This document shows, in pieces, positions 9,240 through 35,946 of a stretch of DNA of 64,000 nucleotides; position 1 is the first letter of the stretch, and each line of letters begins with the position of its first letter. The notes beneath the pieces were generated by a model. The model searched no databases, was not told the DNA's origin, and was given only the letters and a program-made list of their open reading frames with translations. Made by a program: the position numbers and the translations under genes. The stretch is taken from contig NW_003314261.1 in assembly GCF_000143415.4 (NCBI RefSeq), positions 4,814,691 through 4,878,690 on the forward strand, read 5' to 3'. The stretch is from Selaginella moellendorffii (taxonomy: Eukaryota; Plantae; Lycopodiophyta).

Positions 9240-11137
9240 TAGGTGTGGATGATAGTGCTTTTTTCATATCATCACTACCCCACGTCCAGTCTTTGATGCA
9301 AGAATGGGCCTCCCACAGCGAAGGTCTTAGAGCAAAGATGGTGATCCCGCTCTGCCACAAGTACTCAAGCAAGAGCTTGTGCTTTATTGGGCTTTAAGGA
9401 ACACAACTGTATGGTGTTTGCTCTTCTTCGGGGATGTGATTTCTTGGAGCTTCATCTCTACACACTCACTCGATAAGTCTATGATGATGATGATGATTGG
9501 CATGATGATGAGCACTGGATCAAGAACTGGATCTCAACCGAGGATCATTGTGTGGAATTTGGAAGATGGCAGATAAACATTGAACAAGACGTACTGAGAT
9601 GCCTTGGTGGTGACAGTCAAGAGCCATATGATAACTATTATGATAAGGAAAACTTTGACAAAGAAGGCTATTGAGGGAACGAGGGTGGAATTTATGAGTA
9701 CTTCTATCACGTCGCAGTGCTGGTGGCCTGGCCCAAGAGCAAACGCTGTGATGCAATTCTCTCCAGTTGTTTGTATTATGTCGGCAGCAGACGTGTGGCT
9801 GGGCTCATGAAAGACGCTGGCACTGCCGAGGGTGCAAAGGAAGAGGTGCACAAACTGGAGGTGGCACTGGAGAAGTGGAAGCCTCAGCTTATCAGTGGCA
9901 TGTTTGATAAGGGAACTGAGACTTTGGGCACACTCATATCGTCGGGGTGTGAGCATGGAGTGATCGAGCTGGCCAGAATGCTCATGAAAGCTGTCAAGCA
10001 ATATCCTCACAATTTAGAGAAGCTGTTGGAGTTCTTTCTCGACACTCCAGCTTGCAAGGCCAAGGCTTTGGAGATCGTCTCGGAAGCCCCGCTGGAGTGT
10101 GTTGCATTGGCAGTGCATCGCAGCCATGAGTACCGCCAACTCGTAGAGGCTTGAGTGGACAAGCTAACATCAACAGATTTGGAAGTAGAGAAACTCAGGC
10201 TAAAACTCCCATCGTGGTGCAATGGGTGTGCAACCATCTTTGATGTTCACGGACAGTTCCTGGCTAGTGTCGTGAAGTTGATCTCAACACTTGCAGTGTA
10301 TGGCTCACTCAACACTGCCATGGAGCTCGCAAGCATGGAAAAGCAGCTGCTGGTGGATCTGGAAGAGGAACTCAGACTTCACCACAAATGCAGCTATGAT
10401 GAAATGCTTGTACTGCTGTTCATGGTTTCATGGGGAAAGTTATCGATGAACACTGCAAAGTCTATACTCTAGGTGGAGAAGGAGGTGATGAATAATGCAT
10501 TGACACTGCGACCAGTTTGCTAGGCATGAAAGAGAGGGTCACAGTAACAGCCTTGCTTTCTGAGCTGTGTGCTTCTTACTTGCAAGCGAATGCTCCTCAA
10601 CAAGATTTTGAGTCATACTTTTATCCTGGTGAGTACTTTGGTTCTGCGGAAGAGCTCTTTGATTCCATAGAAGAGCACGCTTGAGATGAGTATAATCAGC
10701 TGGCGAGAGCCTACCACTCCAGAGGTCCTATGGCTAAGGAATTTGTGGCGAATGTGTTCCGGTTTGGGGATGAGGAGCTCATCAGCAAGGTGGCTGGATT
10801 GCTCATCGACGGGACGCACTTAACTTGGAAGCTATTAAGTTCTTCTAACATTGTTGTGGTGGCTTTGGATTCCACTGCTGCGGCAAGGAACTCCTTGAGG
10901 AAGGTGGTGGAGGCGAGGATGGAACACCTGTGTTCCAAGCTCCAGTATGGAGGGGAGAGGATTAAGTCAAATCCATCCAAGAGGCAAGGGTTGGAGGTGT
11001 GCTGCCGGCACAGCAAGTGCTGGAAAACCCTGTGGAGACTCCGTGCTCTATATGATATCCGGGTGGAGGAATTTGAGGATCATGCCGCTGCCGAGCTCAA
11101 GGAGTTGGAGCTCGTCTTGAACAAAATGGCTCCATAA
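9240..11137 (+). pseudogene. 2OG-Fe(II) dioxygenase-like gene, copy 1 (5'-truncated, multiple stops and frameshifts)
   Basis: Collinear with 24675-25819 plus 30338-31105 (GVDDSAFF.SSLP.VQSLMQ.WAS.SEGLRAKMVIPLCHKYS ... FEDHAAAELKELELVLNKMAP*). The catalytic N-terminal domain is missing, replaced by AT-rich DNA left of 9240. Confidence 0.9.
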
Positions 11138-14100
11138 GTTCAAAAGAGAGGTAAAAGTTGAAGCACAAACACTTAATTAAGTGCTAAAGATTTCCCTTAG
11201 AGAATAGGTCTCTTTACGGTGAAAGTTTTTTATCCTCCTGTTCCATATACATTGATTATTAAATGCTTGACACAAATTTCTCCAAGAGATATCCCTGGTG
11301 TGTGGTGGGATAGATCAGTCTTGATCACCTCAGTGTTCTTCCATATGCTAACAGCCTAGATCCCTAAAGTTGAATGCAGTGAAAGTGCTGCCATGGATGA
11401 ACATGTAAAGCTTGGAATGCCCACCTTGCTCGCATCATTGAATTGAGGCTCATATCCGGTGTCCACTCCCACAATAGCGCAGCAGAGGGCGGTCTTGGGG
11501 AGGAACTCTGGACAGTCAGTGGATGCATATGGAACGTACACTCTCTAGCACCCAAACCGCCCTGAGCTTGGCGAGATCTTGGCATGAAACTGGGAGCTTG
11601 GTGATGCCTTCCACTGCCAAACACACTGCCTTGGATCGTCCCAGCTGCCCAGCCTTGCCAAGGACCCGACAGCCATGCCCTTCTCAGCCACCACCACCTC
11701 AGCTTCCATCTCAGTTCCCAAAAAGCTGTTACTGTGTGACATCTTGAGCTCCACCAGCTCACGTGAGTGCTCAGAGACAGGCATGCCACCATGCTCACCA
11801 GGGCCACCACGTGATTACCAAGATCCATCACCTTATTGAGCAAGCACCCCAAGACGCAAACAAGCAAAAGCCTTTAGCTGGTTAGTGTAGATGTTTGGAT
11901 TTTGTGTGTAGTGACTTCATTGCTTTGGTATGGTTATATACATAATGGTATGGGTGTGATGGTTGGTGTTTGGTGTCATGGATGGATGACTTAGCTTGTT
12001 TTCTGACATGGAGACTTGTTGTCACTTGTCTCCACACTCCTCCTCAAGGCTCCTATTGTTAGTCAAATGGAGAGATTTGAGGAAGACTTCATGTTTCACT
12101 CAATGTAGCGACTTCATTAGGATATCAAAGACCATTGAGGTGGTTGAGCAAAATTCTAGGTTGATAGTTCTATTGTTGACTTGATCCCAAATGAAGTGGA
12201 ACCTCAAGTCAGTGTGCTTGGTGTGTGAAATCTCACATCCCGAGTCAACACTATTGCTGACATGTTGTTGAAGTAGAATTTGACTATTAGAAATTGTATC
12301 CCGAGGTCTTGTAGCAACATCTTAAGATAAATGGATTCTTTTGCTATTGCTGTAGATGCGATGTATTCAGACTCACACGAGGACATTGCAGTGATCTGCT
12401 GCCTCCTAGAATGCTAAGTAACCACATTACGGTTATACATGATGATCATTTGGATCACCTGCCCAGTCTATGTCCATGTATCCCATGCATATTTCAATGT
12501 ATTTTCTTATACCACTCACATAGCTCATGATCTGCTTCACAGCAGCCCAATGTGAGGATGAAGGGTTATCCAGGAACTTTAAGACACACTGAATGCAAGG
12601 TTAGGTCTAGTCGAAACCATTAAGTAGATGAGACTTCTGACTACTGAATGGTACAATATCATGTTCTCCTCCTTAGGAGTGTCATCTAAAGTTGATATTG
12701 AGCTAAAGGCCTTAGACAACTTTGAGCCTACTTCTAGCCACTAGGTTAGCACCAAACATAGAGTATGTCATGGAGAATGTCATGGATGTATTTCTTTGGA
12801 GAATGTCATGGATGTATTTCTCCTGGGAGAGCTTAAGTACTCCATGTTGCCTATCATGGCAGACTTGAATTCCCAAACAATAGTGCAAATCTCCCAGATC
12901 AGTCATCTTAAATTTGGCAGCAAGGTAAGTCTTAATCTAGTTGATAAGCTGCACCTAGTTGGAGGCTAATAATGTATCATCTACATAGAAGGCTAAGAAT
13001 ATAGAGATTGTTATCAATCACATTGTAAGTGAGGTTAGAAAATCATTGATTTTAGTGTACCATGACTTGGGTTTCAGCCTATATAATGCCTTATGTAAAT
13101 AGCAAATGAGATGCTCCTAGCCTAGAAGGCTGGGTGATGTACACCTCCTCCTCAAGATCACCATTGAGGAAAGCACTTCTCACATCAAGTTGATGGAGCT
13201 CCAAGTCAAGCTCAGTTACATGGCTAATCAAAAGATGAATGGTTGTCAACTTCACAATAGGGCTATAAGTTTCAGAGTAGTCAACTCCCTATATTTATAA
13301 GAAGCCACAAGCTACAAAGCATGCATTCTAGTGCTTGATCCATTAGCTAGGTATTTCATCTTGAACAACCACTTGGCTGCGACTATCTTCCTGCCAGAAG
13401 GGAGGGGAACCAACATCTAGGTTCAATTCTTGATCCACTAGTGAGAGATACTCATATTGCATAACCACTTGCCACTCTAAGGCATCAGGGCTAGAAAAAG
13501 TAGCCTGGTAGCCACAAGGCTCAGCAATCCAATAGAATCCCTTCTTGCACAAAGCTTGAGTAAAGGACTCAAGAGCTTTAAGCATTATAACAATCCCAAT
13601 CTCTTGACAAGGTGGTAGTGTCAAGAGAGGATTTGGAGGAGGTGAGTTGGAAGAGCCTTCAACCATTTCTTCACTAATAAAGAACTCATCCATAAAAGTA
13701 GCAAGGGTTTGCTCATTGGATAAAGTAGAAGTGTTGTTGGTCACCCCCGAAGTGACTGGAGAGTTGGTGGGGAAGTCATGCCACTGCCAAGTAGAGGAGC
13801 ATTGCTCCTCCTGGAAGAAGCTACCTCTAAACTGCTTAGTGAACTCCTCATCTAACACCAAGGACAAGTCCTAGAACTAGAAGAAGCAATACCTCAAATG
13901 TGGTGATAGAGTTCTTGCTTGTTGAAAGAAACATTTTGGCTAACCATGAGCTTATTGAGAGCAAGATTATAAAGGCAGTAAACCTTAGAATGAGCATGAT
14001 AGCCCATGAAGATGGTCTTCTGACTTATGGGAATGCGAGCATATGCTATTCAACCAAAGAGCCTCAAGTGCCCTAACTGAGAGCACTTCCCAGTCAAAGC

Positions 14101-14453
14101 ATAATAAGAAACCGTGCTAGTGCTCCTTGTGGGAAAACAGTTGCAGATATAAAAGGCCATGTTGACCACTTTGCCTCAAAAGGATTTAGGTAAACCTGCA
14201 TGTTGGAGAATGAATCTCTAGCAAAGTGTAATTGAATCGCTCTGCCACACCATTCTGCTGGGGAGTACAGGCTGTCATATATTGTTAATCTATGCTTGTC
14301 TCAGCTAGGAAGTTGAGAAACTTGCTGCTCATGTACTTGCCATCACCATCCTTATATAGCACATGGATTTTCCTTCTAGTAAACATCTCTACCTAGCTTT
14401 TGAAAAGCTTGAAGTGGTTAAACATTTCACTCTTTATGAGGAGAAGACTTACT

Positions 14454-16039
14454 TGTGAGACATAAATCCCTAAGCCCCAAAGTGGAGCCGAAAGGGTGCC
14501 ACATGGTAGTGGCCAAAGCGAAAGCCAAACGAGCATAACATGTTTGGACTAAAAGCTCCAACTTGAAAAGTTGAGAGTGGGAGTGGAACTTCCAACAAAG
14601 TGCTCGAGGAACAAGCACAAAGCAAGCAATAAATGAGTTTCTAGAAAAGGGACACAAGAGGACCAACACATGACACATGGAAGTGTTTGAGATGGAGTCT
14701 GAGAAGGAGTCCGAGATGGAGTCCGAGATGGACTAAGATGGAGTTTGAGATGGACCCAAGATGGAGTTCAAGATGGAGTCTGAGATGGACTGAGATGGAG
14801 TCTGAGATGGACCCAAGATGGAGTCCGAGATGGAGTCTAAGATGGACCCGAGATGGAGTCCGAGATGGAACCTGAGATGGAGTCTGAGAAGGACCTGAGA
14901 TAGAGTCCGAGGTCGAGACCGAGACCAGGACTGGGACTAGGACCGGGACCGGGACCGAGACCGAGACTAGGACCGAGGCTGAGACCAGGGCCGAGGCCGA
15001 GACTAGGGCCGAGACCGAGGCCGAGTCTGGGGTCGAGCTTGAGCCCGAGTCCGAGTCCGAGTCCAAAAGCCCAAAGCGTTCATCTCCCAGACCCTGGGGG
15101 GTTTGGTGAGCTCCAAAAGTATAGTAAGGGGAAGACTTCAGTGGAGCCAATTTGGCCAGAAAAGGCCAGTTTGGCCTAGGAAGGCTGTACCCAAGCATTG
15201 GGTGAAGGGATAACCACTAAGAAGTCCAAGGCTAGAGTGAATACAGACTAATAAATGGGGTAGCTTGGTGAAGTGTTCAAGAGTCAGCTCTAGTTCCCCA
15301 GGAGATCGAATGGCTAATACTCCCAATCCAAGTGTGGGTGGCACTACTTACTTAGATACCTAGTGTGGCTCAACGGAACCTCACTCTAAGCCCATGGCTA
15401 GAGCACCCAAAGGTGGAAGATGGGGAGAGTACCCATGAGGCTCGCATAGGGCCATGGTGTTCTGAAATGTTGTCCCAAAGTTCCAAACTATGGAAAGGAA
15501 GAGGAGTGGTCCTCTGGTGTAGTGACCAATGATACGGTCATGTGGTAAGGAAGTCCCAGAGGACAATGGGACTTAGTGATTGAGCCTATGGGCTTTGTCC
15601 CAATGGCAATGTTGGCAAACACAGCCATGGATAGAAAAGGGATTTGGTGGGGACTGTAAAAGGGATATTGGGGAAGGTTGTTCCCCATGTTTGTGGGCAT
15701 TTTAAGGATACTAAGGAGTGGACCTAGGATGGTCACTCATGGACGGATGGCCCAGTCTTTGAGAAACGGGACTGCAATGCAGGTGGTGTTGGGGTGAATG
15801 GGCGTGGCCTTAGCATAACGGGTTGGTATGTCAATGGTACCTTAGGGTGTCAGTCATTAAATTAGACATGTGGAGCACTTGGATCAAGTGCAATGGTTGA
15901 GTGGCATAGATGTCATTCTTGGGGCTAATAAGTCCCTAAGTCCCAAATAGGACTTACAAAGGTTGTGAGTGAGACTCTTTCAAGTGGTCGAAGGTGTGGT
16001 TAAGTGACTAAAGTAGAATGAAAAATTTTGTCGCTTACA
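14454..16039. mobile_element. 1586-bp solo-LTR-like insertion with a 5-bp TSD
   Basis: Starts tgtgagac and ends gtcgcttaca, flanked by ttact / tcact. The uninterrupted paralogous integrase at ~18030-18060 reads gagaagac-tcacc-acaatgtacctagaat. Confidence 0.8.
14688..15065. repeat. Compound minisatellite: 10-12-bp GAGATGGA(GTCY/CCC/CT) units grading into 6-bp GAGACC/GGGACC/GAGTCC units
   Basis: Directly visible tandem array. Confidence 0.95.
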
Positions 16040-16570
16040 TCACTATAGTATACCTAGAATAGTCATCGATAAAAGATACAAAGTACCTCTTGTGGCTAAG
16101 TTTGTTCACAAGTAGATATCACACATCACTATGAACCAAATCTAGCAAGCTTATAGGTTGATCCTCAATGGTTCTTAATGTAAATAGAAGGCAAACTTGC
16201 TTGCCAAGATGGCAGTTTTCACACATGCCCAAATGACTAGTTAGGAATATAATGCCTATTTTCACCCTTTACTCAATAGTGATTTAGCATAGAATAACTA
16301 TAAAGCAGAACTTTAAACCCTTAGATATGTGGGCCAAGAGTACTATAATAAAACCTAAGTTTAGGGCTTTGGGCCACTGAATGAAGGTATAGAGCCAAAT
16401 TCCCAAATATATAACTAAAAAGTAAAGGAACTAAAACATGGAATAACTTTTGAGTATATGCCCTAAAGAGTGAAGAGACAGGAACAATAAGCAATATAAA
16501 TATAGTTCTAAAGTATCCAACATTCCATTTCCAAGACTAGCACATAAAACAGAGCCAAATAAAGCTTAAT

Positions 16571-17253
16571 TGTAGTGCTATTTCTCTCCCCTTAAGCCAA
16601 TTAGAAAAAAGGTAGTTACTTGATAAGAGAGCCCTTAGTGGCTATTTTATCTCTATTTATCCCTTAAGGTTTCTAGAATCCACAATGATAGTATATCTAA
16701 ATTTCATCCCATGATCACATGTGCTACATTCACCCCCCCCCCCCCCCCTTCCCCCTTCAGAGATGTCAATGTCCTCATTGACTATTGACTAGCAACCATT
16801 ACTGAACTAAGGGGAACCAACACTTCCATTTCCGCATTGAATTTACCAATTTCTATAGTGGAGACTAGCTATTCCATATAAAGCAACTAATTATCCACCC
16901 ATACCGCAGTCCTACAGTGGATACTTTCGTCTATGAATGCTCCACCAAGAGGAAGGATATACACATGGATGCCCAATACATATGATTTCAAATTTAAGGG
17001 TAGAAATATACCTTGTTCAAGGGTATATTATATTTTTAAGTAGCCACTAATCAATAAGAATCAAACCCGTGCCATTTGCTCTGATACCACATGTAGTGCA
17101 TCTTATCTCTCTCCCCTTAAGCTAACTAGAAAAGGGGTAATTGCTTGATGAGAGAGCCCTTAGTGGCTATTTTATCCACATTTATTCCCTAAGGTTCTAA
17201 AGATCCATGATGACAATATATCCAAATCTCATTCCATGATCACATGCACTACA
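16571..17253 (-). mobile_element. TRIM (terminal-repeat retrotransposon in miniature), 683 bp, non-coding
   Basis: Direct repeats at 16571-16728 and 17092-17253 (TG...CA). PBS TGGTATCAGAGC (tRNA-iMet) on the - strand at 17078-17089. PPT poly-C from ~16731. TSD ttaat/ctaat. Confidence 0.9.
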
Positions 17254-17468
17254 CTAATGCTATTTCAACATACCAATAGCCTAATGCAAAAATATGGGTA
17301 TTCCACCAACTAACATGGTATAGAGTTTAGGCTTAAACCTAAACCAGATGCAAAACAAGGATATGCAAGCAAGTGGGAGCTAGACTATGCCTCACGTTGG
17401 TCAGTCATACCCAACCTACCCACTATCCCTATTATATATTTGGAACCCCTACGCTAGGGATAAATCTA

Positions 17469-18150
17469 CTATATTAGGATTGGAAGAAGCAATACCTTAA
17501 ATGTGGTGATAAAGTTTTTACTTATTAAAAGAAACATTTTAGTTGACCACAAGCTTCTTGAGAGCAAGATCACAAAGGTGGTAAGCCTTAGAATAAGCGT
17601 GATAGCCCACAAAGATAGTATTTTAACTCTTGGGAATGCAAGCATATGCTGTACAACCAAAGACCACTGAGAGTGCTTCCCAATCAAAGCATGATAAGAA
17701 ACCATGCTAGTTCTCCTTGTGAGAAGACGATTGTAGATATAAAAGGCCATGTTGACCACTTCACCCCAAAAGGATTTGGGTAAACCTATGTGTTGGAAAA
17801 GGCATTAAACAGTCTCTAGTAGAGTCACTTTGCCACACCATTCTACTAGGGAGTATAAGGCATCATATACTAGTGAACAATGCCAATCTCAGCTAGGAAG
17901 TTGAGAAACTCACTACTCATGTACTCACCACCACCATCCGTGCATAGCATATGGATTTTCCTTCTAGTAAACATCTCTGCCCAGCTCTTGAAAAGTTTGA
18001 ACTGGTCAAACACTTCACTCTTTGCAAGGAGAAGACTCACCACAATGTACCTAGAATGGTCATGGATAAAAGACACAAAATACCTCTTGTGGCTAAGTGT
18101 TTCCACAAGCAGATAGCATACATCACTATGAACCAAATCCAACAAGCTAG
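17469..18150 (-). mobile_element. Second copia integrase fragment, same family as 13880-14453
   Basis: ORF MLDLVHSDVC...YFVSFIHDHSRY...KSEVFDQFKLFK...TDGGGEY; nucleotide similarity to 13880-14453. Confidence 0.85.
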
Positions 18151-24039: not shown

Positions 24040-25819
24040 ATCGGCGAGTGCTTTTGCCGCTGGAGGTGAGATCGATGTGCAGCTCCATCCCATGCTGCGC
24101 ACTCTGGCAGTGGAGGGCATGGCGGGTGGCGCCATCCGGCTCCCACTCTCACTCGAGGATCTTGACAAGCTCAAGGCGGTCTCACAGCCAGCACCATTCG
24201 GCATTGGCAAGCGTACTCTTGGCGATACAAGCGTCCGCCAGCCCTGGCAACTTGATCCCTCCAAGATCTCTTTCCCCGACAATCCAGAGTTTCTCGCCAA
24301 GACCGCCTACGACATAGCGTCCGCCGCTCTCTCGAGCATGGGAGTGCACGCGGGATCCCTAGAGCTTGGCGTGAAGCTGTACAAGATGCTACTGTATGAG
24401 CCAGGTGGGCATTTCAAGCTTCACAGCGACAAGGAGAAGGAAGCTGGCATGTTTGCGACCATGGTCATCCAGCTTCCTACCCAGACGGGCCATGGGGGTG
24501 GAGGTCTCACTGTCCGGCACTTGAGCTGCTCCAAGGCCTTCGAATTCCAATCCACTAGCGGCTACTTCTACACCACCTTTTTTTGTCATTGCGAGCGTAA
24601 GCTTGACGAGGTGACAAGGGGATCGAGGCTGTGCTTGGTCTTCAGCTTGGTAAGGAAGAACACCAGGTTCTTGGGCGTGGATGATAGTGTGTTCTTCACT
24701 TCAGCACTGCCCCGTGTCCAGGCTTTGATGCAAGCATGGGCCAGCCGCAGCAAGGGTTTTAGAGCAAAGATGGTGATCCCACTTTGCCACAAGTACTCCA
24801 CCAAATGCTTGCGCTTTGCTGGGCTCAGGGGACATGACCGCGTGGTGGCTGCTCTTTGCGGGGGATGTGATTTCCTGGAGCTTCATCTCTGCACGTTGAC
24901 CAAGCTTGTGCAGGATCCCCAACACGTTGATGATGATGATAGGAAGCATGATGATGAGCACTGGATTGAGAACTGGGTTTCAACCGAGGATCACTGCAAG
25001 GAATTTGGAAGATGGCCAATCAACATTGAACGAGACGTACTGAGATGCATTGGTGGTGACAGTCGAGAGCCATTTGACAAATTCCCTGACGAGGAAAGCT
25101 TTGACAAGGAAGGCTATGGAATTTACAAACACTTCTATCATGTTGCTGTGCTGGTGGCCTGGCCAAAGAGCAAACGCTATGACGCAATTCTCTCGAGTTG
25201 TTCGAGTGACGAGCACAGCATGGTTGTGCCCGGGCTCTTGAAAGACGCCACCACTGCTGAGGATGCAAAGCAAGAGGTGCACAAACTGGTGGTGGCGCTC
25301 GTGAAGTGGAAGCCTGAACTCCTCACAGCCAAGGTTTTGGGCTTGTGTCACAATTATGGACTCAGGGGAGCATGGAGCGATCAAGCTGGCCAGAATGCTT
25401 ATAAAAAATGTCAAGTCCCTCAAGAAACATCCTGACAAATTAGGGAAGCTATTGGAGTTCTTCCTCGACACTCCAGCATGCAAAGCAGAGGCTTTGGAGA
25501 TCGCCTCTGAGGCCCCACTGGAGTGCCTTGCACTGGCAGTGCGAGTACCGCCAGATTGTCAATGCTCAAGTGGACAAGCTTATATCAACGGATTTGCAAG
25601 CAGAGAAGCTCAAACTCCTGGTCGAACAGCGGAACGCAACCATCTTCGACGTTCATGCAAAGTTCCTGGCCAGTGTCGTGAAGCTGATCTCCAAGCTTGT
25701 GGAGTATGGCTCACTCGATACTACCAAGCAGCTTGCAAACGAGGTGGAGAATCAGCTGCCAATGGATCTGGAAGAGGAGCTCAAAGCATACGGTAGCCGC
25801 TACAATCTGGTGCTAGTAC
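24040..25819 (+). pseudogene. 2OG-Fe(II) dioxygenase-like gene, copy 2, 5' part (catalytic domain); continues at 30338-31105 after a copia insertion
   Basis: PAPFGIGKRTLGDTSVRQPWQLD...KLYKMLLYEPGGHFKLHSDKEKEAGMFATMVIQLP...HGGGGLTVRH...YTTFF...EVTRGSRLCLVFSL matches the 2OG-FeII_Oxy_3-type DSBH fold (HxD present, 2OG-binding R present). Frameshifts near 25360 and 25540. Confidence 0.88.
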
Positions 25820-28800
25820 TGAGACAAATCAGGATCAAAGCGCACTGCGCTAGCGGACAGAACAGGAAAACCCTAATGTCTACGTGGTGAGGTGTGTCAT
25901 GTAACACTCCCCCCCAAACTGAAGCCACTCACCAAACCAAATCTGTTGCGTAGGAGCTGAAACTGGTGTGGCCCCAATGGCTTGGTGAGAAAATTGGCTG
26001 GCATGTCCTGTGTCCTGAGATGTTGGACGGCCAAGGTGCCACCATCAACCAACTCATGCATGTAGTGAAATTGGACTTCAATGTGCTTTGAGTAGGCATG
26101 GTGGACGGGGTTCTTGGACATGGCAATGCTGCTTCGGTTGTCACACCAAGAAGTAGTGGGGCTAGCTTGTGAACATCCCAGCTCAGCAAGTAACCCTTGA
26201 GCCCAGACCACATCCCTGCTACTAGTAGTGAGTGCAATGTACTCTGCTTCTGCACTAGAAAGGGCCACCATAGATTATTGCTTGGAGGCCCACGTGATGG
26301 CACCTCCTGAGAAGGAAAGGCAAATGCCAGAAGTCAAGCGATGACCTTTGTTGTTGGCAAAATTAGCATCCGTGTAGCATGTCAATGATGCATCACCCCC
26401 TGAATAAGCAATGCCATAGTCTATAGTGCCTTGGAGGTATCTCATAATACACTTGGCAGCTTGCCAATGTATGGTGGTTGGTGATGTGTTGTACTGACTC
26501 AAGGCAATAGTCATATATATGATGTCGAGGCGAGTCATTAGGGCCAAATATATGAGGCAACCAATGAGATGCCGATAGGGAGTCCCAGTGGGTAGAGGCT
26601 CACCAGACTACTCAACTATGAGGTTGATAGCACCAACGACCATCGGGGTCTTGATGGGGTGGCAATTATGCATACCAAACCAATCCAGCAAGACTTCAAC
26701 TTTACGTTGTTGGCTAAGCATGTAGCCACTGGACTCAAGATCATGTGTGACTTCAAAGCCAAGAAAGTAGGAGACTTGGCCAAGATCCTTCATCTGGAAT
26801 TGTTGGCTGAGAGTAGCTTTTAGAGCAGCAATGGCATTGGTGTAATCACCCATGATGAGCAAATCATCAATGGAGAGGGCCACAATAAGCATGTGCTCAG
26901 CATGACCATTGACATACACATTGTGATCAGCATGACAGCGATGAAAGCCTTGAGCACGTAGGGTGGCATCAAATTTTTTATACCAAATACGGGAGCTCTA
27001 TTTTAGGCCATACAAAGCTTTCCGCAGTTGCCATATAGGGCCACCAAGGGCAACATCATCCTCAAAACCAGGAAGTATATGCATATAGATGTCCTCTTGC
27101 AAATCCCCATTCAAAAATGTAGTTTTGATGTCCATATGGTGGACTTGCCATTTGCGAGCAGCTGCAAGTGCAAAAAGAGTATAGAGGCTAGCCATTTTTA
27201 CAACCGGTGAGAATGTTTCATCGTAGTCAAGGCCATGGACTTGGTGAAAACCGCGAACAACCAACCGTGCCTTATAATGTACAACCTAACCATTTTTCCC
27301 ATACTTCTTGGAAAAAATCCATTTTGGATCCAAGACATGTCATCCTAGTGGCACTAAATCAACTGGAACATAAGTTCAGTTAACCTGAATGGAAGAAACT
27401 TCTTCCACAATAGCTTCCATCCAAGATGAAGCCTCAAGTCCTGAGATGGCCTCATCATAGGTCATGGGGATGCCGACGTAAAAAAGGCCACAAATGTCAT
27501 CAAGTTCTGCAGCATCTGCTTCAGCATTTTCCCGGACTTTCAACGAGGGCCGACGTTCCCAAGGGTGATCAAGAACTGGCATCAGATCAAGCATGCCACG
27601 ACAGCGACAAGGTGGTGGAGGTGTCGGAGGCCTATCCTCAACTGGAGGAGCATCAGCTGGTTCAAGCATGTCCAGAAGTGGAGGATTCCCCAGTGGAATC
27701 TCTGGTGGCAACTCAGGAATAGGATCTTGAAGCAGAGGCAAGAGTGGACCATCTCCCATAAATGGGATCAAAGGAACAAGTTGAGTCTCAGCAATGAAAG
27801 AAGGATCTTGAAGAGCCTCTGTACACATGGGAAAGTTATCTTCATTGAACATGACGTCTATGCTTACAAGAGAGATGCAAGAACAACTTGTAAGCTTTTC
27901 TACTGATAATATCGCCCTGTGCATATCCCACGAAGATGAATTTTTTACTTTTGGGATCTAGCTTTTTCTGAAGTTGATCAGGGGTATGTGCATATGCTGC
28001 ACAACCGAAGACCCAAAAGTGGGACACATCAGGAGTGGAACCTATCCAAAATGCCTCAAGGGTTTTTCCATCCAAAGCAACTGTGGCAAGGTGATTTTGT
28101 ACGTGCATTGCGGTGGCTATAGCCTCTTGCCAAAACATCTTGTCAAGATGTGCATCAGCTAACAAAGCGCAAGCAACATTGACAAGAGTGCAATTCTTCC
28201 TTTCTGCAACACCATTTTGCTAGGAGCAGGCTGTGGCTTGCAATCGTATGCCTACATCATGACAGATGCCCCGAAGCTCATTGTTGAGGTATTCACCACC
28301 ACTATCAACTCAAAGAGCTTTTATCTTTCAACCAAGGATGTTTTTAACGTAGGCCTTGTACATTTGAAAGGCAGCAACTACATCACTCTTACGTATCAAG
28401 AAATGGATGCATGTTCGACGGCTATAATCATCAATGAATGTGAAGAAATATCTTGCACCATCGTGACTTGGCACGTCCATGGGGCCGCAAAGATCAGAAT
28501 GGACCAAATCTAGAAGTCCAAGTGCTTGATGCTTACTCGGTGAGAAATTCCGGTGGTGATGCTTGCCTAAAATGCAAGCTTCACAAAATGTAGATGGGAT
28601 ACGTTGAAAGTCCAATCCAGTAACAATATCTTGGGATTTCATCTGTTGAAGATGAACATGACCAAGTCTCTTATGCCAAAGCTTCACACAAGAATCGGCC
28701 TCTATAGTCTGAAAGGCCTAAACCAGGTTGGTAGCAATAATCTCATACAAGTCCCTAATGTGTGACCCACGAAACAATTGTGTACCAAGCATATGAAAGT

Positions 28801-30332
28801 CACTAGAGTCAACCAAAGAAACTCCCTTTTCATCAAAGACTACATTTTAATCACATATTTTGGCGACGGACATTAAGTTTCATCGCAAGGTGGAAACATG
28901 CATGGCACCATCAAAGGCCATGGTCCTCCCATGATCAAGTGAGAGCCAAAATTGTTTGATGCCTTCTATAGGGATAGTGGTATTGTCACCTAAATGAACA
29001 CCATATTTTCCAATGCTCAGTTGATAACACTCAAAAAGACTCTTCTTATTGCCCATAAGATTAGTACAACTAGAGTCTAGGAGCCACCGGCTTGGTGCTG
29101 CAATTGCCTCTGCGTTGTAGAGCTCTTCAGCATCCTCATTTGCTGTAGCGATTCCATCACGCTCGAGCAGATTGAGTCGCTTGACAGGCTTGGGAGCAAG
29201 GCAATATTGAGCCCAGTGGCCCATCTCCAAACAACGAGCACACTGATTCTTAGCAAGTCTAGGCTAGCTGAGCAACACCTATGGCACCAAGAGTGAAATG
29301 GATGTCTTCAACATCCATTCACAAATAGATTCCTTCAGGCTAGAGGAAACTGGCAGCATCCAGACTCACACTGCTAAGCTCTAGGGCTTCTTCACACAAC
29401 TTGCGACTACAATGGATGTCTTCAACATCCATTCACAAATGGATTCCTTGAGGCTAGAGGAAACTGGCAGCATCCAGACTCACTGCTAAGCTCCAGGGCT
29501 TCTTCACACAACTTGCGGCTGCTGGGGCAAAGCACTGTCTCACAGATGAGTAGTAGAGGTTGTAGCTTTACAGGTCTTTGCCAACTAGCTGATGTAAGCT
29601 CATGAGTTTGGACTTCCCGAGAGGTCACTCAGCCTAGTACTATTCAAACCCACCAAATATCCCAAAACCCTTAACCGATTAGAAAAAGTGCACTTTTATT
29701 CATGGGCCCTTTCCCTCTATATGGATTGTTTTTCAAGTCGTTCCCTTTAGTTACTTACAGTTGGAAGAATGCAATTGAAAGCCTACTTCTCCAACTAGGG
29801 ATGATTTGGGCAGATGCCATGAGGAGTCTTCGCAATATTGAGGCCATGCAAAGCGAGAGAGCTCAAATGCCATAGGCTGTGTATGCTTCGTAGTCTTCTG
29901 GTGATGCCAAGGTGGCAAAACCACATATAGCTGCAAATGCCCAGAAAGAGCAAAATTCCGTGGCATTTGGGCATGCCAACTTCCAAAGCTTTGCTATAGT
30001 GGATTTTGGAAATTTGAGGACAAGCACATCACAATACTCCCTCTAGCCTTGGAATCCCAAAGGTTCCAATCACGCACCTCAACAGTGCCAGAGCCTAGAG
30101 CTGGTGATGACTCTATCCCATCTACAATCCCCAACAACCCATGAAACAAGAGATAAGATTCAAGATGGATCTTGAATCCCTCAAACCCTTCTCCATCAAA
30201 CTCATAGATGGATCCTTCCATAGTGTTATCCTAGCTCCGATACCATGAGACAAGTCGGGATCAAAGCACACCGCGCTAGTGGACAGAACAGGAAAACCCT
30301 AATGTCTATGTGGCAAGGTGTGTCATGTAACA
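25820..30332 (-). mobile_element. Full-length Ty1/copia LTR retrotransposon (4513 bp), decayed ORF
   Basis: 87-bp LTRs at 25820-25906 and 30246-30332; exact TSD agtac; PBS TGGTATCGGAGC at 30234-30245; PPT from 25907. Domains: gag (MEGSIYEFDG..), protease (WLLDSSCTNLM), GAG-pre-integrase (LWHKRLGH), integrase (DLVHSDLCGP), RT (GLDYDETFSPV), RNase H (VALSSAEAEY). Confidence 0.97.
29297..29517. repeat. Tandem duplication (~114-bp period) inside the copia gag region
   Basis: aatggatgtcttcaacatccattcacaaat...cttcttcacacaacttgcg occurs at 29297 and 29411. Confidence 0.9.
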
Positions 30333-30337
30333 AGTAC

Positions 30338-31105
30338 TGCTGTTCATGGTTTCATGGGGAAAATTGTCTGTGAACAGTGCAAAGACCATTCTCACAAAAG
30401 AGAGCATCATGTTTGAACTGATTGATGCATTGTCACTGATGAGGAGCGCGGCCACTTTGCTCGGTGTGAAAGAGAGGGGCCCCCTGAGAGCCTTGTTTGC
30501 TGGGCTGTGTGCTTCTTACTTGCAAGCAGGCTTGCAAGAGAATGGTCAAGAAGAAATTAGTTCCACCAACAAATACTTTCATTCCATAAAGAGCCACTTC
30601 GGTTCTGCAGAAGATCACTTTAATGCTGCGGAAGAGTACGCTCGAGATGAGTATAATCAGCTAGCAACAGTCTGCGACTCCGGTGTGATTACCAGGGCCA
30701 GGGAGTTTGTGGAGAATGTGTTGTGGTTTGGGGACGAAGAGCTCATTGGCAAGGTGGCCGGATTGCTCATGGACCGGACGCACTTAACTTCGAAGCTACT
30801 AAATTCCTCCCCAGAGTATTGTTGCGGTGGCTATGGATTCCACTGCTGCCGAGAGGAACGCTTTGAGGAATGTGGTGGAGGCGAGGATGGATCACTTGCG
30901 TTCCGGGCTCGAGTATGGAGGGGAGAGGATGACGTCGAATCCATTCAGGAGGGCGAGGATTGGAGGTGTGCTGCCGGAGGATCAAGTGCTGGAAAATCCG
31001 CGGAGGCTCCGTGCTCTGTGGGAGATCCGCGTGGAGGAATTCAAAGATCATGCTGCCGCCGAGCTCAATGATTTGGGGCTCGTCTTGAACAAGCTGGTTC
31101 CGTAA
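30338..31105 (+). pseudogene. 2OG-Fe(II) dioxygenase-like gene, copy 2, 3' part
   Basis: Removing the copia rejoins LVLV-LLFMVSWGKL, as in copies 1 and 3. Ends EFKDHAAAELNDLGLVLNKLVP*. Frameshift near 30810. Confidence 0.9.
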
Positions 31106-31489: not shown

Positions 31490-31772
31490 CCATCAGGAAA
31501 TCATATTCTCTGACTGCGATATACAGCCGTCGGAGAGCAGTAGCTCTTCCACTTGCTTGGGCTTGAGAAGCTGCATCACGCACAGGTAATCTTCCAGGAC
31601 CGGATCCACATTGAGGTCTGCGACCAGCGATCGTACCATGCTCGTAAAGATGTCGTTGTCCTGTCCGTTCCTATTGTTCCAGGACTCCAAGATTCTCCAT
31701 CAAAGGGGTGAGCCTGGATCATCGCGTTCCACGCGACCGGATCCTGAGCATGAGCTTGATTGATGATGCGCA
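31490..31772 (-). pseudogene. Degenerate PPR copy (psi-b), heavily deleted
   Basis: DPVAWNAMI, ESWN, NGQ, DNDIFTSMVRS, VDPVLEDYLCVMQLLKPKQVEELL match non-contiguous blocks of the intact PPR. Confidence 0.9.
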
Positions 31773-33892
31773 TGAGGTCTCACCGTCCAGCACTTGGGCT
31801 GTTCCAAGGCCTTCGAATTCCAATCCCCCAGCGGCTACTTCTACACCACTTTTTTTTTTGTGATTGCGAGCATAAGCTTGACGAGGTGACGAGTGGATCG
31901 AGGCTGTGCCTGGTGTTTTGTTTGGTGAGGAAGAACACCAAGTTCCTGGGTGTGGATGATAGTGCTTTTTACATATCATCACTGCCCCGCGTCCAGTCTT
32001 TGATGCCCTCCCGCTGTGAAGGTCTTCGAGCAAAGATGGTGATCCCGCTCTGCCACAAGTACTCGAGCAAGAGCTTGCGCTTTTCTGGGCTTAAGGGACA
32101 CGACCGCGTGGTGGCTGCACTTCGATCCGGGGGTGTGATTTCCCGGACCTCCATCTCTGCACGCTTACCAAGCTTGAAAAGGTCGATGATGATGTGATAT
32201 TGATGACGAGCACTGGATCGAGAACTGGGTCTCAACCGAGGATCACTGTGTGGAATTTGGAAGATGTCAGATCAATGTTGAAGAAGACGTATTGAGATGC
32301 GCTGGTGGTAAGAGCCGTTTAACAACTTCTACGATAAGGAAAAATTTGACAATGAAGGCTACCGGGGGGAACGACGGGAATTTCCGAGTACTTCTATCAC
32401 GTAGCAGTGCTGGTGGCCTCGCCCAAGAGCAAACGCTGTGTGGTTATTCTCTCGAATTGTTTGAGTCCCGTCCACAGCACGATTGTGGTTGGGCTCGTGA
32501 AAGACGCTGCCACTGTTGAGAATGCAAAGGAAGAGGTGCACAAATTGCTGGTGAACTAGCCTGAACTGGTTTTGGACTTGTGCCTCGGGAAGGACGAGAT
32601 GTTTGATCATGGAGATGAGAATTTGGTGGGCAAGCTCAAGTCCGCAGCGTATGAGCATGGAGCGATCGAGCTGGCGAGAATGCTCATGAAATCTGTCAAG
32701 GAATATCCTGACAATTTAGGGAAGCTGTTAGAATTCTTTCTCGACACTCCCCGGAGATCGTCTCAGAAGCCCCGCTGGAGTGCGTTGCATTGGCAGTGCA
32801 TCGCAGCCACAAGTACCGCCAACTCGTAGAGGCTCGAGTGGACAAGCTAACATCAACGGATTTGGAAGCAAGAGAAACTCAGGCTAAAACGTCCATCGTG
32901 GTGCAACCATCTTCAACGTTCATGGACAGTATATAGTATTTCAAATTGGTGTTTACACAATCTTACAGCTTCAGAAATCGTTTCTCGTAAAGAACCGACG
33001 AACGAAACAAGAAATTTAAGTGTCGTGAAGTTGATCTCAAAGCTTGCGGCGTATGGCTTGCTGCAGCTCGCAAGCAAGGTGGAAAAGCAGCTGCTGGTGG
33101 ATCTGGAAGAGGAACTCAGACTGGACCACAAAGGCAGCTACAATGAAATGCTAGTACTGCCGTTCATGGTTTCATGGGGAAAGTTATCGATGAACACTAC
33201 AAAGTCCGTATTCTGGGTGAAGAAGAAGGTGATGAATAATGCATTGACAGTGATAAGAAGCACGGCCGGTTTGCTAGGCGTGAAAGAGAATGGCGCAGTA
33301 ACAGCCTTGTGTTGCTGGGTTGTATGCTTCTTACTTGCAGGCAAATGCTCCTCGACCAGACTTCGATTCCACGACTGAGCACTTTAAATTTGGTTCTCCG
33401 GAAGAGCACTTCGATTTTGCAGAAGAGCGCGCTCGAGATGAGTATAATCGGCTGGCGAGTGGCTACCATTCCAGTGTGATTCCCGTGGCCAGGGATTTTG
33501 TGGAGAATGTGTTCTGGTTCGGGGACGAAGAGCTCATCGGCAAGGTGGCTGGATTGCTCATCGACCGGACGCACTTAAGTTGGAGGCTATTAAGTTCTTT
33601 TTCTCCGAGCATCGTTGCGGTGGCTATGGATTCCAGTGCTGACCGTGTTCCATCCTCGCCTCCACCACCTTCCTCAAGCGTTCTGCGTTCCGGGCTCGAG
33701 TAAGGGGAGGAGAGGATCAAGCCAAATCCTTTCAAGAGGGCGAGGGTTGGAGATGTGCTGCCGGAAGAGCAAGTGCTGGAAAACCCGCGGAGACTCCGTG
33801 CTCTGCACGAGATCCGGGTGAAGGAATTCAAGGATCATGCTGCTGCGGAGCTCGAGGATTTGGAGCCCGTCTTGAACAAGTTGGCTCCGTAA
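31773..33892 (+). pseudogene. 2OG-Fe(II) dioxygenase-like gene, copy 3 (5'-truncated, frameshifted)
   Basis: Begins mid-domain (ggtctcaccgtccagcac, GLTVQH), includes CDCEHKLDEVTSGSRLCLVF, and is collinear to ...VLNKLAP*. Confidence 0.9.
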
Positions 33893-34260: not shown

Positions 34261-35946
34261 TCATACACAGACTGCGATAGGACACAGCCGTCGCAGAGCT
34301 TTCTCGGCCATCTCAGTGAGCTCCTTGTCCCCGGCCCTCTGGCAAACCCCAAGAAAAGTCTTCCACACGTCGTAGTCCGGCTCGAAAGGCATGCAGTTGA
34401 GCAGCTCTTCCGCTTGCTTGGGCTTGAGAAGCTCCATCACACAGAGATAATCTTCCAGGACCGGATACACCTCAAAGTCTGCGACCATGGATCGGAGATA
34501 GCTTGCAGCTTCGTCAGTCCGGCCTAGAGACCTGCACGCGGATACCATGCTCGTAAAGATGCCGTTGTCCGGCATCACACCCCTGAGCACCATGTTGGAG
34601 AGCAAACTCACAGCCGCTGCATACTTCCCCTTCGTGGCCAATCCAGACACCATCAAACTCCACGACTCCAAGTTCTTCTCCTCTATCGAATGGAAAACCG
34701 AGGTTGCCTCCTCGAGAGACCCCAGCCTCAAGAACGTCTTGAGAAGCAAGTTGTTCAGCTCCAGATCTCTGAGGCAAGAGCTCCACCGAAACTCCTTCGC
34801 AATCTTCCCAGCATCGTCCAAATTGGTGCACGACTCCATGACCGTGAGGAACGAGTTCTTGTCCGGCTTGACATATCTCTGGATCATCCCCTTGAAGATC
34901 TTGTACGTGTCCCCTGCCTGTCCGTTCCTGTTGTAGGCCGCCATGATCGTGTTCCACGACTCCAAGTTCCGCTGCGCTCCCATTCCCTCGAACAGAATCC
35001 TAGCCTCCTCGATCTCTCCATGCAAAGAGTGAGCACGGATCATCGCGTTCCACGCGACCGGATCCCTGTTGGGCATGAGCTTGAAGATGCGCTTCGCTTC
35101 AGAGAACATCGCCCGATCGAGGTAAGCCATGAGCAGCGTCGTCCACGGAGCCTCGTACGAAGTAGACATCTTGTTGAACACGTCCTGCGCGTCGCTGATC
35201 TCTCCAGCCTTGAGGTAAGCCTCGAACAGCGGCGTGCAAGAAGCCACACTCGGGTTCTTCATCCTGTGCACCATCTCCTTCGCCGTCGCAAGATCCCCGC
35301 TCTCGGCAAATGCTGCGATCATAGCTCCCCACACTCTCTCGTGCCCGGGCGAAGCTCGGAAGATCGTGAACGCCCTCTGCGGCATCCCGGCACGCGCATA
35401 CCCCTCGATCATCGTCACCCAGAGGTCCACTGCCGGATCCTTCGCCAGCTTGAACAGCTCCTTGGCCTCGTCCATGAGCCCTCTCTGGGTATACGCCGAG
35501 AGCATGATGTTCCAAGTCTTGACGTCCCTCTTCGCAGCACCATCGAAGAACTCCCTGGCCTCCTCGATCCTCCCGTTCACAATGTAAGCCTCCAGCATGT
35601 TGTTGAGCGCAATCATGCTGTTACTAGTCGGCAGAGTGTCATACGCGTAGCGCGCTTCCTCGGTGCTGTTGCAAACGCCGAAGAGCTTGATCAGGAGATT
35701 GCCCAGGAAGCCATCGTGGTCGTATCGCCTCTTTCTGATCAGTCCCTGGAGCCGGCGGCCCTCCTCGAGACCTTTCTCTTTGATACATCGTCGCAGGAGG
35801 AAGTAGTAAGCATCCTTGCTGCTCCCTCGATCGGATCTCGCGATGAATTCCACAGCCTCGGACAAGCTTCCCTCTTTGTAGTCACCAGCCACAGCTCGCA
35901 GCAGCGATCGAAAGTGTAAAAGCCTGGAGAGTGAGACCCGGACCAT
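34261..35946 (-). CDS. PLS-class pentatricopeptide repeat protein with a truncated E-like C-terminus and no DYW (561 aa, intronless)
   Basis: Tandem PPR motifs (e.g. RDVKTWNIMLSAYTQRGLMDEAKELF, RDPVAWNAMIRAHSLHGEIEEARILF) and E-domain start MPFEPDYDVWKTFLGVC. The N-terminus resembles an organellar transit peptide. Confidence 0.95.
   Translation of the reverse strand: MVRVSLSRLLHFRSLLRAVAGDYKEGSLSEAVEFIARSDRGSSKDAYYFLLRRCIKEKGLEEGRRLQGLIRKRRYDHDGFLGNLLIKLFGVCNSTEEARYAYDTLPTSNSMIALNNMLEAYIVNGRIEEAREFFDGAAKRDVKTWNIMLSAYTQRGLMDEAKELFKLAKDPAVDLWVTMIEGYARAGMPQRAFTIFRASPGHERVWGAMIAAFAESGDLATAKEMVHRMKNPSVASCTPLFEAYLKAGEISDAQDVFNKMSTSYEAPWTTLLMAYLDRAMFSEAKRIFKLMPNRDPVAWNAMIRAHSLHGEIEEARILFEGMGAQRNLESWNTIMAAYNRNGQAGDTYKIFKGMIQRYVKPDKNSFLTVMESCTNLDDAGKIAKEFRWSSCLRDLELNNLLLKTFLRLGSLEEATSVFHSIEEKNLESWSLMVSGLATKGKYAAAVSLLSNMVLRGVMPDNGIFTSMVSACRSLGRTDEAASYLRSMVADFEVYPVLEDYLCVMELLKPKQAEELLNCMPFEPDYDVWKTFLGVCQRAGDKELTEMAEKALRRLCPIAVCV

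What the first reader, a model, noticed from the sequence alone, without database searches (positions are those of the whole stretch)
9240..35946. Three-unit tandem array of a [2OG-Fe(II) dioxygenase-like gene -> <- PLS-PPR gene] module
Seen: the order is Ox1(9240-11137) ..TE nest.. PPRpsi-a(23060-23712), Ox2(24040-31105, split by copia), PPRpsi-b(31490-31772), Ox3(31773-33892), intact PPR(34261-35946). Two unrelated genes were co-amplified as one unit at least twice. All Ox copies appear broken and one PPR survives. Inference: this is either birth-and-death amplification of an RNA-editing PPR carrying a neighbour, or a functionally linked pair (RNA-binding PPR plus a nucleic-acid/protein hydroxylase-type enzyme).
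Basis: partly seen in the sequence, partly recalled or inferred. Interest (0 to 1): 0.75.

Follow-up and report, generated by a model that had tools for sequence, protein, structure and literature searches.

The report
Decayed tandem oxygenase–PPR gene-pair array
In the spikemoss Selaginella moellendorffii an old local duplication made three copies of a neighbouring pair of unrelated genes, a prolyl-hydroxylase-like oxygenase and a PPR RNA-binding protein; every copy except one PPR gene has since decayed, which is ordinary gene birth and death and not evidence that the two genes work together.

Summary
The window is Selaginella moellendorffii nuclear DNA. It carries three same-strand copies of an intronless oxygenase gene ("Ox", about 890 codons), and each is followed by a convergent PPR gene or PPR remnant.

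All three Ox copies are dead in this haplotype:
- Ox1 has lost its first ~195 codons.
- Ox3 has lost its first ~140 codons.
- Ox2 carries a Ty1/copia insertion, a ~160-bp deletion and two frameshifts, and has Arg in place of an iron-binding His.
- The Ox2 allele on the other haplotype lacks the copia but has its own N-terminal frameshift and the same His-to-Arg change.

Only PPRc is intact (561 aa, 98% identical allele on the other haplotype). It looks PLS-like but ends after an E1-like motif, with no E2 or DYW domain, so an RNA-editing role is unproven.

Synonymous divergence is similar for Ox pairs (0.31–0.45) and for PPRa–PPRc (0.45). dN/dS is below 1 throughout. The pair was therefore probably duplicated as one unit, and copies stayed under selection for a while before decaying.

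Ox belongs to a large PHD/P4H-like family that also occurs in a moss, a fern and a green alga. The scan had already noted this same stretch as a horizontal-transfer candidate (s1-432246).

The parts
9236..11137 (+). Ox1 pseudogene. It is truncated at the 5' end: the equivalent of residues 1-195 of the Ox2 allele P0212 is missing, so all three iron ligands are gone. It has at least two frame changes and four in-frame stops.
11624..11763 (-). Fragment of a different PPR gene type. It is 68-71% identical at protein level to residues 585-639 of P0010, contains a frameshift, and lies about 490 bp beyond the Ox1 stop codon.
11800..23060 (.). Spacer rich in insertions between Ox1 and PPRa. It holds a degenerate integrase core (17870-18145, minus strand), a gag aspartyl protease remnant (21896-22174, plus strand), a 12-nt minisatellite (14690-15026) and 570-bp direct repeats (13872-14452 and 17475-18040).
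23068..23732 (-). PPR pseudogene a. It corresponds to residues ~94-369 of the intact PPR at 79-87% nucleotide identity, has many indels that are not multiples of three, and lacks both ends of the gene.
24041..25819 (+). Ox2, 5' part. It has a 466-codon open stretch with the annotated ATG at 24092 (P0001, SELMODRAFT_402801). The HxD motif is present but the distal iron-binding His is replaced by Arg (ORF residue 174). Compared with the other-haplotype allele there is a ~160-bp deletion at about 25367 and a frameshift at about 25501-25541.
25820..30332 (-). Ty1/copia LTR retrotransposon inserted in Ox2. It has TG...CA ends, 87-bp LTRs (25820-25906 and 30246-30332, 91% identical) and a 5-bp target duplication AGTAC (25815-25819 and 30333-30337). 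On the minus strand the domain order is Pol_BBD, gag-pre-integrase/rve, SH3, RVT_2, and the coding region is degraded.
30333..31104 (+). Ox2, 3' part. It has a 1-nt frameshift at 30813/30815 relative to the other-haplotype allele and ends at the stop codon TAA at 31102-31104.
31496..31770 (-). PPR pseudogene b. Five collinear pieces match the intact PPR (residues ~288-343, 459-518 and the stop region) at 84-96% nucleotide identity, with large internal deletions. It abuts the truncated 5' end of Ox3, as a single deletion across a head-to-head junction would leave it.
31774..33891 (+). Ox3 pseudogene. It is truncated at the 5' end (starts at about residue 141 of P0212, so the HxD motif is missing while the distal His is kept), has many frameshifts, and ends at the stop codon TAA at 33889-33891. 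The gene model P0003 (SELMODRAFT_402802) is a chimera of the Ox2 3' part, the PPRb region and Ox3.
34261..35946 (-). Intact PPR gene (PPRc, 561 aa). It has a run of about 31-residue repeats, then a P-L-S-P-L-S series and an E1-like end, with no E2 or DYW domain. Its allele P0007 on the other haplotype scaffold is 98% identical and the same length.

Best explanation
This is the remains of an old local tandem duplication of a segment of roughly 5 kb. The segment held two unrelated, convergently transcribed, intronless genes: a prolyl-hydroxylase-like Fe(II)/2-oxoglutarate oxygenase of about 890 residues (Ox) and a PLS-like PPR gene. Two rounds of duplication, by unequal crossing-over or replication slippage (inferred), gave the order Ox1-PPRa-Ox2-PPRb-Ox3-PPRc. 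The copies stayed under purifying selection for part of their history, so they were real genes at first. They were then lost one at a time, through deletions across gene junctions, small indels, retrotransposon insertions and loss of a catalytic ligand. Only PPRc still has an open reading frame. The adjacency of Ox and PPR reflects where the duplication breakpoints fell. It is not evidence of a shared function.
For: Species: Selaginella moellendorffii. Three Ox and three PPR copies alternate in one orientation. NG86 estimates with bootstrap intervals: Ox1-Ox2 dS 0.45 (0.35-0.55), Ox2-Ox3 0.43 (0.35-0.52), Ox1-Ox3 0.31 (0.25-0.40), PPRc-PPRa 0.45 (0.32-0.64). The two genes therefore have the same age range. 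dN/dS is 0.43-0.55 for Ox pairs and 0.27 for the PPR pair, and every interval excludes 1. 19 of 39 indels among the Ox copies are multiples of three. Similarity among copies stops at the stop codons, and the spacers of 360-390 bp cannot be aligned, as expected for neutral DNA at dS about 0.45. Disabling lesions are private to each copy, so the copies decayed after the duplication. The Ox2 alleles of the two haplotypes carry different lesions but share the His-to-Arg change. PPRc is intact in both haplotypes. The adjacent UniProt accessions D8R743 (PPRc allele) and D8R744 (Ox2 allele) suggest that the array is also present on the other haplotype. Intact Ox paralogues exist elsewhere in Selaginella, and homologues occur in a moss and a fern.
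Against: The order of the two duplication events is not resolved. The non-adjacent copies Ox1 and Ox3 are the most alike (0.83-0.94 identity in most 100-nt windows), whereas PPRb is at least as close to PPRc as PPRa is. This mosaic needs gene conversion or a more complex history. The 5' end of PPRa (residues 1-93) is absent, and only ~430 bp separate it from the Ox2 start. A breakpoint inside the PPR gene would explain that, but it fits badly with the low dN/dS of PPRa. A fourth Ox of similar divergence (P0002) lies on another scaffold, so not all amplification was local. No expression data were available.
Confidence: 0.8

Rival explanations
1. Ox and the PPR form a functional two-gene module, for example an organelle RNA-binding protein working with a hydroxylase, and the module was amplified because the two work together.
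For: Both genes were copied together twice, and copies of both stayed under purifying selection after duplication (dN/dS 0.27-0.55). They are convergent with a short spacer of ~360-390 bp in units 2 and 3.
Against: The surviving PPRc has no intact Ox next to it in either haplotype. The Ox paralogue P0050 is fused in its gene model to a GT8 glycosyltransferase, so its upstream neighbour is not a PPR. No Selaginella PPR model fetched here contains Ox sequence. No second intact PPRc-type protein exists in the collection, including on the scaffold that carries P0002. The Ox fold matches protein prolyl hydroxylases and not nucleic-acid oxygenases. The family is abundant in bacteria and fungi; from general knowledge those organisms have no PLS-class PPR editing factors.
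Confidence: 0.05
2. The array is much older than dS suggests, and the genic parts have been kept similar by repeated gene conversion between units. In that case the similar divergence of Ox and PPR reflects conversion and not one common duplication date.
For: Identity is mosaic: Ox1-Ox3 reaches 0.90-0.94 in several 100-nt windows and about 0.8 elsewhere. Similarity ends exactly at the coding boundaries while the spacers cannot be aligned. A partial PPRc copy about 94% identical at protein level sits at the P0010 locus elsewhere on the scaffold.
Against: Coding constraint (dN/dS below 1) together with dS of about 0.45 already explains why the spacers cannot be aligned. Most lesions are private to single copies, so conversion has not been frequent recently.
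Confidence: 0.12
3. Ox is carried by, or is itself part of, a mobile element that inserted repeatedly beside PPR copies.
For: Ox is intronless and occurs at several dispersed loci in Selaginella. The 3' end of similarity among copies is sharp.
Against: The sharp 3' boundary is simply the stop codon. No terminal repeats or target duplications flank the Ox copies. The strict alternation with PPR copies of the same age points to one duplicated segment. The family is an ordinary cellular gene of about 770-890 residues in bacteria, fungi, an alga, a moss and a fern.
Confidence: 0.03

Closest known systems
Birth-and-death evolution of tandemly duplicated plant gene clusters (general model; PPR and 2OG-dioxygenase families are both known to expand by local duplication)
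   Same: Direct tandem units, comparable divergence of all parts, private disabling lesions, TE insertions, one surviving copy.
   Different: The unit carries two unrelated genes. Both were under selection for a time after duplication, yet all copies of one of them died.
PHD/P4H-type Fe(II)/2-oxoglutarate oxygenases (Pfam PF13640 2OG-FeII_Oxy_3; structures PHD2/EGLN1, Pseudomonas P4H, PiuC, OGFOD1). In plants, class DOXB denotes the prolyl 4-hydroxylases (PMC5447875).
   Same: The N-terminal ~200 residues are predicted to adopt the same double-stranded beta-helix fold (Foldseek E 1e-6 to 1e-4). Intact relatives keep the HxD...H ligands and the basic 2OG-binding residue.
   Different: These proteins are much longer (770-890 aa) and have a long conserved C-terminal region of unknown function. 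No sequence relative has a solved structure. The window ORF scores below the Pfam cut-off (19.6 against 27 bits). The copies in this window are pseudogenes.
PLS-class PPR proteins of the At1g56690 / At4g02750 / At2g35030 type (names given by NCBI to the best hits)
   Same: A run of about 31-residue S-type repeats followed by a P-L-S-P-L-S series and an E1-like motif. The best database hits are E/DYW-type PLS proteins at 22-29% identity.
   Different: The protein ends about 5 residues after the E1-like motif. There is no E2, no DYW deaminase domain and no Pfam E-motif hit. Apart from its own allele it has no relative above 29% identity.
Ty1/copia LTR retrotransposons
   Same: RVT_2, integrase, gag-pre-integrase and Pol_BBD domains in the order integrase before RT, TG...CA ends, a 5-bp target duplication and LTRs.
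   Different: The LTRs are very short (87 bp) and the coding region is degraded. The insertion appears to be absent from the other haplotype.

Membership tests
Fe(II)/2OG oxygenase, PHD/P4H-like (PF13640) | Double-stranded beta-helix fold | tested here: met
   AlphaFold2 model of the Ox2 N-terminal ORF has mean pLDDT 79. Foldseek against the PDB gives PiuC, a Burkholderia 2OG oxygenase, Pseudomonas P4H, PHD2 and OGFOD1 as top hits, E 1e-6 to 1e-4.
Fe(II)/2OG oxygenase, PHD/P4H-like (PF13640) | HxD...H iron-binding triad | tested here: not met
   In Ox2 the HxD motif is present but the distal His is Arg in both haplotypes (CHCERKL against the family pattern DCxHxL). Ox3 lacks HxD and Ox1 lacks all three ligands because of their 5' truncations. 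The intact paralogues P0051 and P0053 keep the triad.
Fe(II)/2OG oxygenase, PHD/P4H-like (PF13640) | Basic residue that binds the 2OG C5 carboxylate | tested here: met
   Arg in the motif G-S-R-L-C-L of Ox2 aligns with a conserved Arg/Lys column.
Fe(II)/2OG oxygenase, PHD/P4H-like (PF13640) | Score above the Pfam gathering cut-off | tested here: not met
   The Ox2 ORF scores 19.6 bits against a cut-off of 27. Full-length relatives P0004 and P0005 pass with 29.2 and 34.8 bits.
PLS-class PPR editing factor | Tandem PPR motifs | tested here: met
   PF01535 E 4.5e-56, PF13041 E 9.5e-46.
PLS-class PPR editing factor | P, L and S motifs of about 35, 36 and 31 residues ending in P-L-S-P-L-S-E1 | tested here: inconclusive
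   Motif lengths were read by eye from the translation. They fit six or seven repeats of about 31 residues followed by 35/36/31/35/36/~28 and an E1-like 'MPFEPD..W' end. No dedicated PPR motif caller was available.
PLS-class PPR editing factor | E1-E2 extension | tested here: not met
   No Pfam E-motif (PF20431) hit. The ORF stops ~5 residues after the E1-like motif, and no E2-like reading is seen in the 3' spacer.
PLS-class PPR editing factor | DYW cytidine-deaminase domain | tested here: not met
   No PF14432 hit. TBLASTN with the DYW-bearing protein P0035 finds no DYW remnant anywhere in the window.
Tandem segmental duplication of a two-gene unit | Alternating copies of both genes in one orientation, with similar divergence | tested here: met
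Tandem segmental duplication of a two-gene unit | Similarity running through the intergenic spacers, with a definable unit junction | tested here: not met
   The spacers between the two stop codons and the head-to-head spacers do not align. This is explained by dS of about 0.45 together with deletions, but the unit junction therefore cannot be placed.
Ty1/copia LTR retrotransposon (insert in Ox2) | LTRs, 5-bp target duplication, integrase upstream of RT | tested here: met

The most novel reading that the evidence does not exclude
The convergent Ox-PPR pair was once a real functional module in lycophytes, for example a prolyl-hydroxylase-like enzyme acting with, or on, an organelle RNA-binding protein. 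It would have been kept in triplicate under selection before a paralogous Ox elsewhere took over. In that case PPRc would still depend on an Ox-family enzyme acting in trans.
Probability: 0.05. Interest if true: 0.6.

Novelty: new member of a known kind. Interest (0 to 1): 0.2.

Why it matters
The main value is for annotation. SELMODRAFT_402801 and SELMODRAFT_402802 are models built on pseudogenes, and 402802 is a chimera of two Ox copies plus a PPR remnant. The locus is also a well-dated example of how PPR genes and their neighbours are gained and lost in a genome with a very large PPR family. It shows as well that the long PHD-like oxygenase family is an old green-lineage family of unknown function and not a Selaginella-only import. 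It does not open a new mechanism.

Tried and rejected
- **Chance co-location.** A PPR on the same 2.9-Mb scaffold as P0002 (P0033) and one on the same 1.5-Mb scaffold as P0058 (P0035; accession D8SC00 against D8SC72) are only 22-26% identical to PPRc and not demonstrably adjacent. I rejected these as chance.
- **Codon-position counts.** Raw counts at first looked neutral. This was partly because the wrong frame was used for the last ~290 nt, and proper NG86 estimates show constraint.
- **ORF 11364-11867 (minus strand).** I tested it as a possible 3' end of PPRa. It is unrelated; the real PPR-like signal there is in another frame and belongs to a different PPR type.
- **Solved structures.** Sequence searches against solved structures gave nothing.
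- **Assembly artefact.** Rejected, because the copies differ by 12-25%, the only gap lies outside the array, and the other haplotype has the same neighbours.
- **Copia as a mis-predicted intron in the other-haplotype allele.** Rejected, because no GT-AG pair gives the observed read-through.
- **Joined Ox2 sequence.** The two halves of Ox2 were always aligned and searched separately.
Full report
**Identity of the DNA.** The 452-codon ORF at 24077-25435 is 100% identical to SELMODRAFT_402801 of Selaginella moellendorffii (P0001). The window is therefore spikemoss nuclear DNA from a 6.95-Mb scaffold. GC content is 46%, and the single 100-N gap lies at 6293-6392, outside the finding.

**Observation.** The repeat finder and a self-BLASTN show three direct copies of a gene of about 2.5 kb:
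- Ox1 at 9242-11139.
- Ox2 at 24077-25821 plus 30334-31106.
- Ox3 at 31774-33894.

They are 75-84% identical over whole BLASTN alignments, with E-values from 1e-96 to 0.

TBLASTN with the intact PPR (34261-35946, minus strand, 561 aa) finds two further minus-strand remnants:
- PPRa at 23068-23732. It covers residues ~94-369 at 79-87% nucleotide identity and has many indels that are not multiples of three.
- PPRb at 31496-31770. Five collinear pieces cover residues ~288-343, 459-518 and the stop region at 84-96% identity.

**State of the Ox copies**:
- Ox1 starts at the equivalent of residue ~196. It therefore lacks the whole catalytic core, and it has at least two frame changes and four in-frame stops.
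- Ox3 starts at residue ~141, so it lacks the HxD motif, and it changes frame many times.
- Ox2 keeps 466 open codons. However, the nearly invariant distal iron-binding His is Arg (CHCERKL against the family pattern DCxHxL). Further downstream it has two frameshifts and an insertion.

The insertion in Ox2 is a Ty1/copia element at 25820-30332 on the minus strand. Its features are:
- domains Pol_BBD, gag-pre-integrase/rve, SH3 and RVT_2, in copia order;
- TG...CA ends;
- 87-bp LTRs that are 91% identical;
- a 5-bp target duplication, AGTAC.

PPRb abuts the truncated start of Ox3, which is what one deletion across a head-to-head junction would leave. The gene model SELMODRAFT_402802 (P0003) is a chimera of the Ox2 3' part, the PPRb region and Ox3.

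**The other haplotype.** The 90%-identity cluster of P0001 also holds SELMODRAFT_408077 (P0212, 891 aa) from a 3.67-Mb scaffold. That scaffold also carries the 98%-identical PPRc allele (P0007/P0214). The UniProt accessions of the two are adjacent, D8R743 and D8R744.

P0212 reads straight across the copia site. Relative to it, the window has a ~160-bp deletion at about 25367, a frameshift near 25501-25541 and a 1-nt shift at 30813/30815. No GT-AG pair could splice the copia out to give that read-through, so the insertion is probably specific to this haplotype.

P0212 is not a healthy gene either. Its first 21 residues are in another frame, so it loses the conserved VEG...LPLS motif, and it shares the His-to-Arg change. 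Ox2 is therefore dead in both haplotypes, with independent later lesions.

**Was the pair duplicated as one unit, and were the copies ever functional?** NG86 estimates were made on in-frame codons, with the Ox2 halves handled separately and never joined. Bootstrap intervals are in brackets.

| Pair | dS | dN/dS |
|---|---|---|
| Ox1-Ox2 | 0.45 (0.35-0.55) | 0.43 |
| Ox2-Ox3 | 0.43 (0.35-0.52) | 0.49 |
| Ox1-Ox3 | 0.31 (0.25-0.40) | 0.55 |
| PPRc-PPRa | 0.45 (0.32-0.64) | 0.27 |

All dN/dS intervals exclude 1.

- The two genes have the same age range, which supports co-duplication.
- Copies of both were under purifying selection for part of the time since.
- About half of the indels among the Ox copies (19 of 39) are multiples of three, which points the same way.
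- Similarity among copies ends exactly at the stop codons (TAA at 31102-31104 and 33889-33891; for the PPR, ~10 nt past its stop). The spacers of 360-390 bp do not align. That fits neutral DNA at dS of about 0.45.
- Disabling lesions are private to each copy, so the decay came after the duplications.

**What remains unresolved.**
- The order of the duplication events is unclear. The non-adjacent copies Ox1 and Ox3 are the most alike, with patches of 0.90-0.94 identity, whereas PPRb is at least as close to PPRc as PPRa is. Gene conversion or a more complex history is needed to explain this.
- PPRa lacks residues 1-93 and only ~430 bp separate it from the Ox2 start, so the unit junction cannot be placed.
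- A fourth Ox of similar divergence (P0002, SELMODRAFT_409722) lies on another scaffold.

**What Ox is.**
- Pfam gives only a sub-threshold PF13640 hit for the window ORF. Full-length relatives pass the cut-off.
- An exhaustive HMMER search finds 4376 cluster representatives.
- The closest relatives (40-48% identity) are other Selaginella genes: SELMODRAFT_437525/439806, 404931/414781, 424217 and 420502.
- Next come a moss (Ceratodon purpureus) and a fern (Adiantum nelumboides).
- Further members occur in the green alga Ostreobium, and one sequence comes from a krill genome record. The Atlas clusters are mainly bacterial and ascomycete.
- The family is thus an old and widespread group of proteins of about 770-890 residues. 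Each has an N-terminal oxygenase domain and a long conserved C-terminal region.
- An AlphaFold2 model (pLDDT 79) matches PiuC, Pseudomonas P4H, PHD2 and OGFOD1. This is the protein prolyl-hydroxylase type, not AlkB or TET.
- No sequence relative has a solved structure.
- In plant nomenclature the prolyl 4-hydroxylases are class DOXB (PMC5447875). The long proteins here are not classical P4Hs.

**What the PPR is.**
- PPRc has strong PPR hits.
- By eye it has a run of ~31-residue repeats followed by a P-L-S-P-L-S series and an E1-like 'MPFEPD..W' motif.
- It has no E2, no DYW domain and no Pfam E-motif hit, and there is no DYW remnant anywhere in the window.
- Apart from its allele, its best hits are E/DYW-type PLS proteins at only 22-29% identity.
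- It is therefore a divergent, truncated PLS-like protein. An editing role is possible only with a deaminase supplied in trans, and this is unproven.

**Functional linkage.** Nothing supports it:
- PPRc survives without a working Ox beside it in either haplotype.
- The Ox paralogue P0050 is fused in its gene model to a GT8 glycosyltransferase, so at that locus the upstream neighbour is not a PPR.
- None of the Selaginella PPR models fetched contains Ox sequence.
- No second intact PPRc-type protein exists in the collection.

The conclusion therefore rests on indirect evidence.

**Side observations.**
- The RefSeq PPR model XP_024534088 (P0010) lies elsewhere on the same scaffold, with an allele on the other haplotype. 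It begins with a partial copy about 94% identical to PPRc residues 148-218, followed by the PPRc C-terminal end read in another frame.
- A fragment resembling the body of that model (68-71% protein identity) lies at 11624-11763, just beyond Ox1.
- The 11.9-kb interval between Ox1 and PPRa carries only weak retroelement remnants, a 12-nt minisatellite and 570-bp direct repeats.

**Verdict.** The feature is real and was described accurately. It is best explained as an old tandem duplication of a two-gene segment followed by birth-and-death decay. It is ordinary in kind, useful for annotation, and of low general interest. The scan had already noted this same stretch as a horizontal-transfer candidate (s1-432246). 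The moss, fern and alga homologues argue against a recent import into Selaginella.

Noticed in passing
window 11624-11763 (-), and the P0010/P0213 locus elsewhere on the scaffold: The RefSeq PPR model XP_024534088 (812 aa) starts with a partial copy about 94% identical to PPRc residues 148-218, followed by the PPRc C-terminal end and 3' flank read in another frame. It then continues into a different PPR. A fragment of that different PPR lies just 3' of Ox1. This suggests a further, younger duplication or a fourth unit outside the window.
   Followed up: partly
window 24041-25435 and P0212 (other haplotype): The two haplotypes carry different lesions in Ox2. This window has the copia, a ~160-bp deletion and two frameshifts. 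The other haplotype has an N-terminal frameshift. Both share the loss of the distal iron-binding His. The copia LTRs differ by 9%, which is more than expected for an insertion private to one haplotype; with only 87 bp per LTR the estimate is noisy.
   Followed up: partly
Ox family, proteins P0050-P0061: The long PHD-like oxygenase family has at least five other loci in Selaginella and homologues in Ceratodon (moss), Adiantum (fern) and Ostreobium (green alga). This argues against the reading of this stretch, noted elsewhere in the scan, as a recent microbial transfer into Selaginella. The function of the conserved C-terminal region is unknown.
   Followed up: partly
window 56240-58534 (-): A 764-codon ORF encoding a Ser/Arg/Lys-rich, probably disordered protein. 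It has no Pfam hit and no usable Atlas hit.
   Followed up: partly
window 14690-15026: A 12-nt minisatellite (GAGATGGAGTCY-like units grading into GAGACC/GGGACC units) inside ORF 14641-15198 (minus strand).
   Followed up: no
window 37443-37982 (-), 48290-49621 (-), 50292-50365 (+): Neighbouring genes to the right of the array: a ferrochelatase exon (PF00762), an AP2-domain gene and a tRNA-Ile(TAT).
   Followed up: no
window 9180-9241: Ox1 similarity starts abruptly after an AT-rich stretch ending ...TTTTATAG. The missing ~600 bp of the Ox1 5' end is nowhere else in the window.
   Followed up: no
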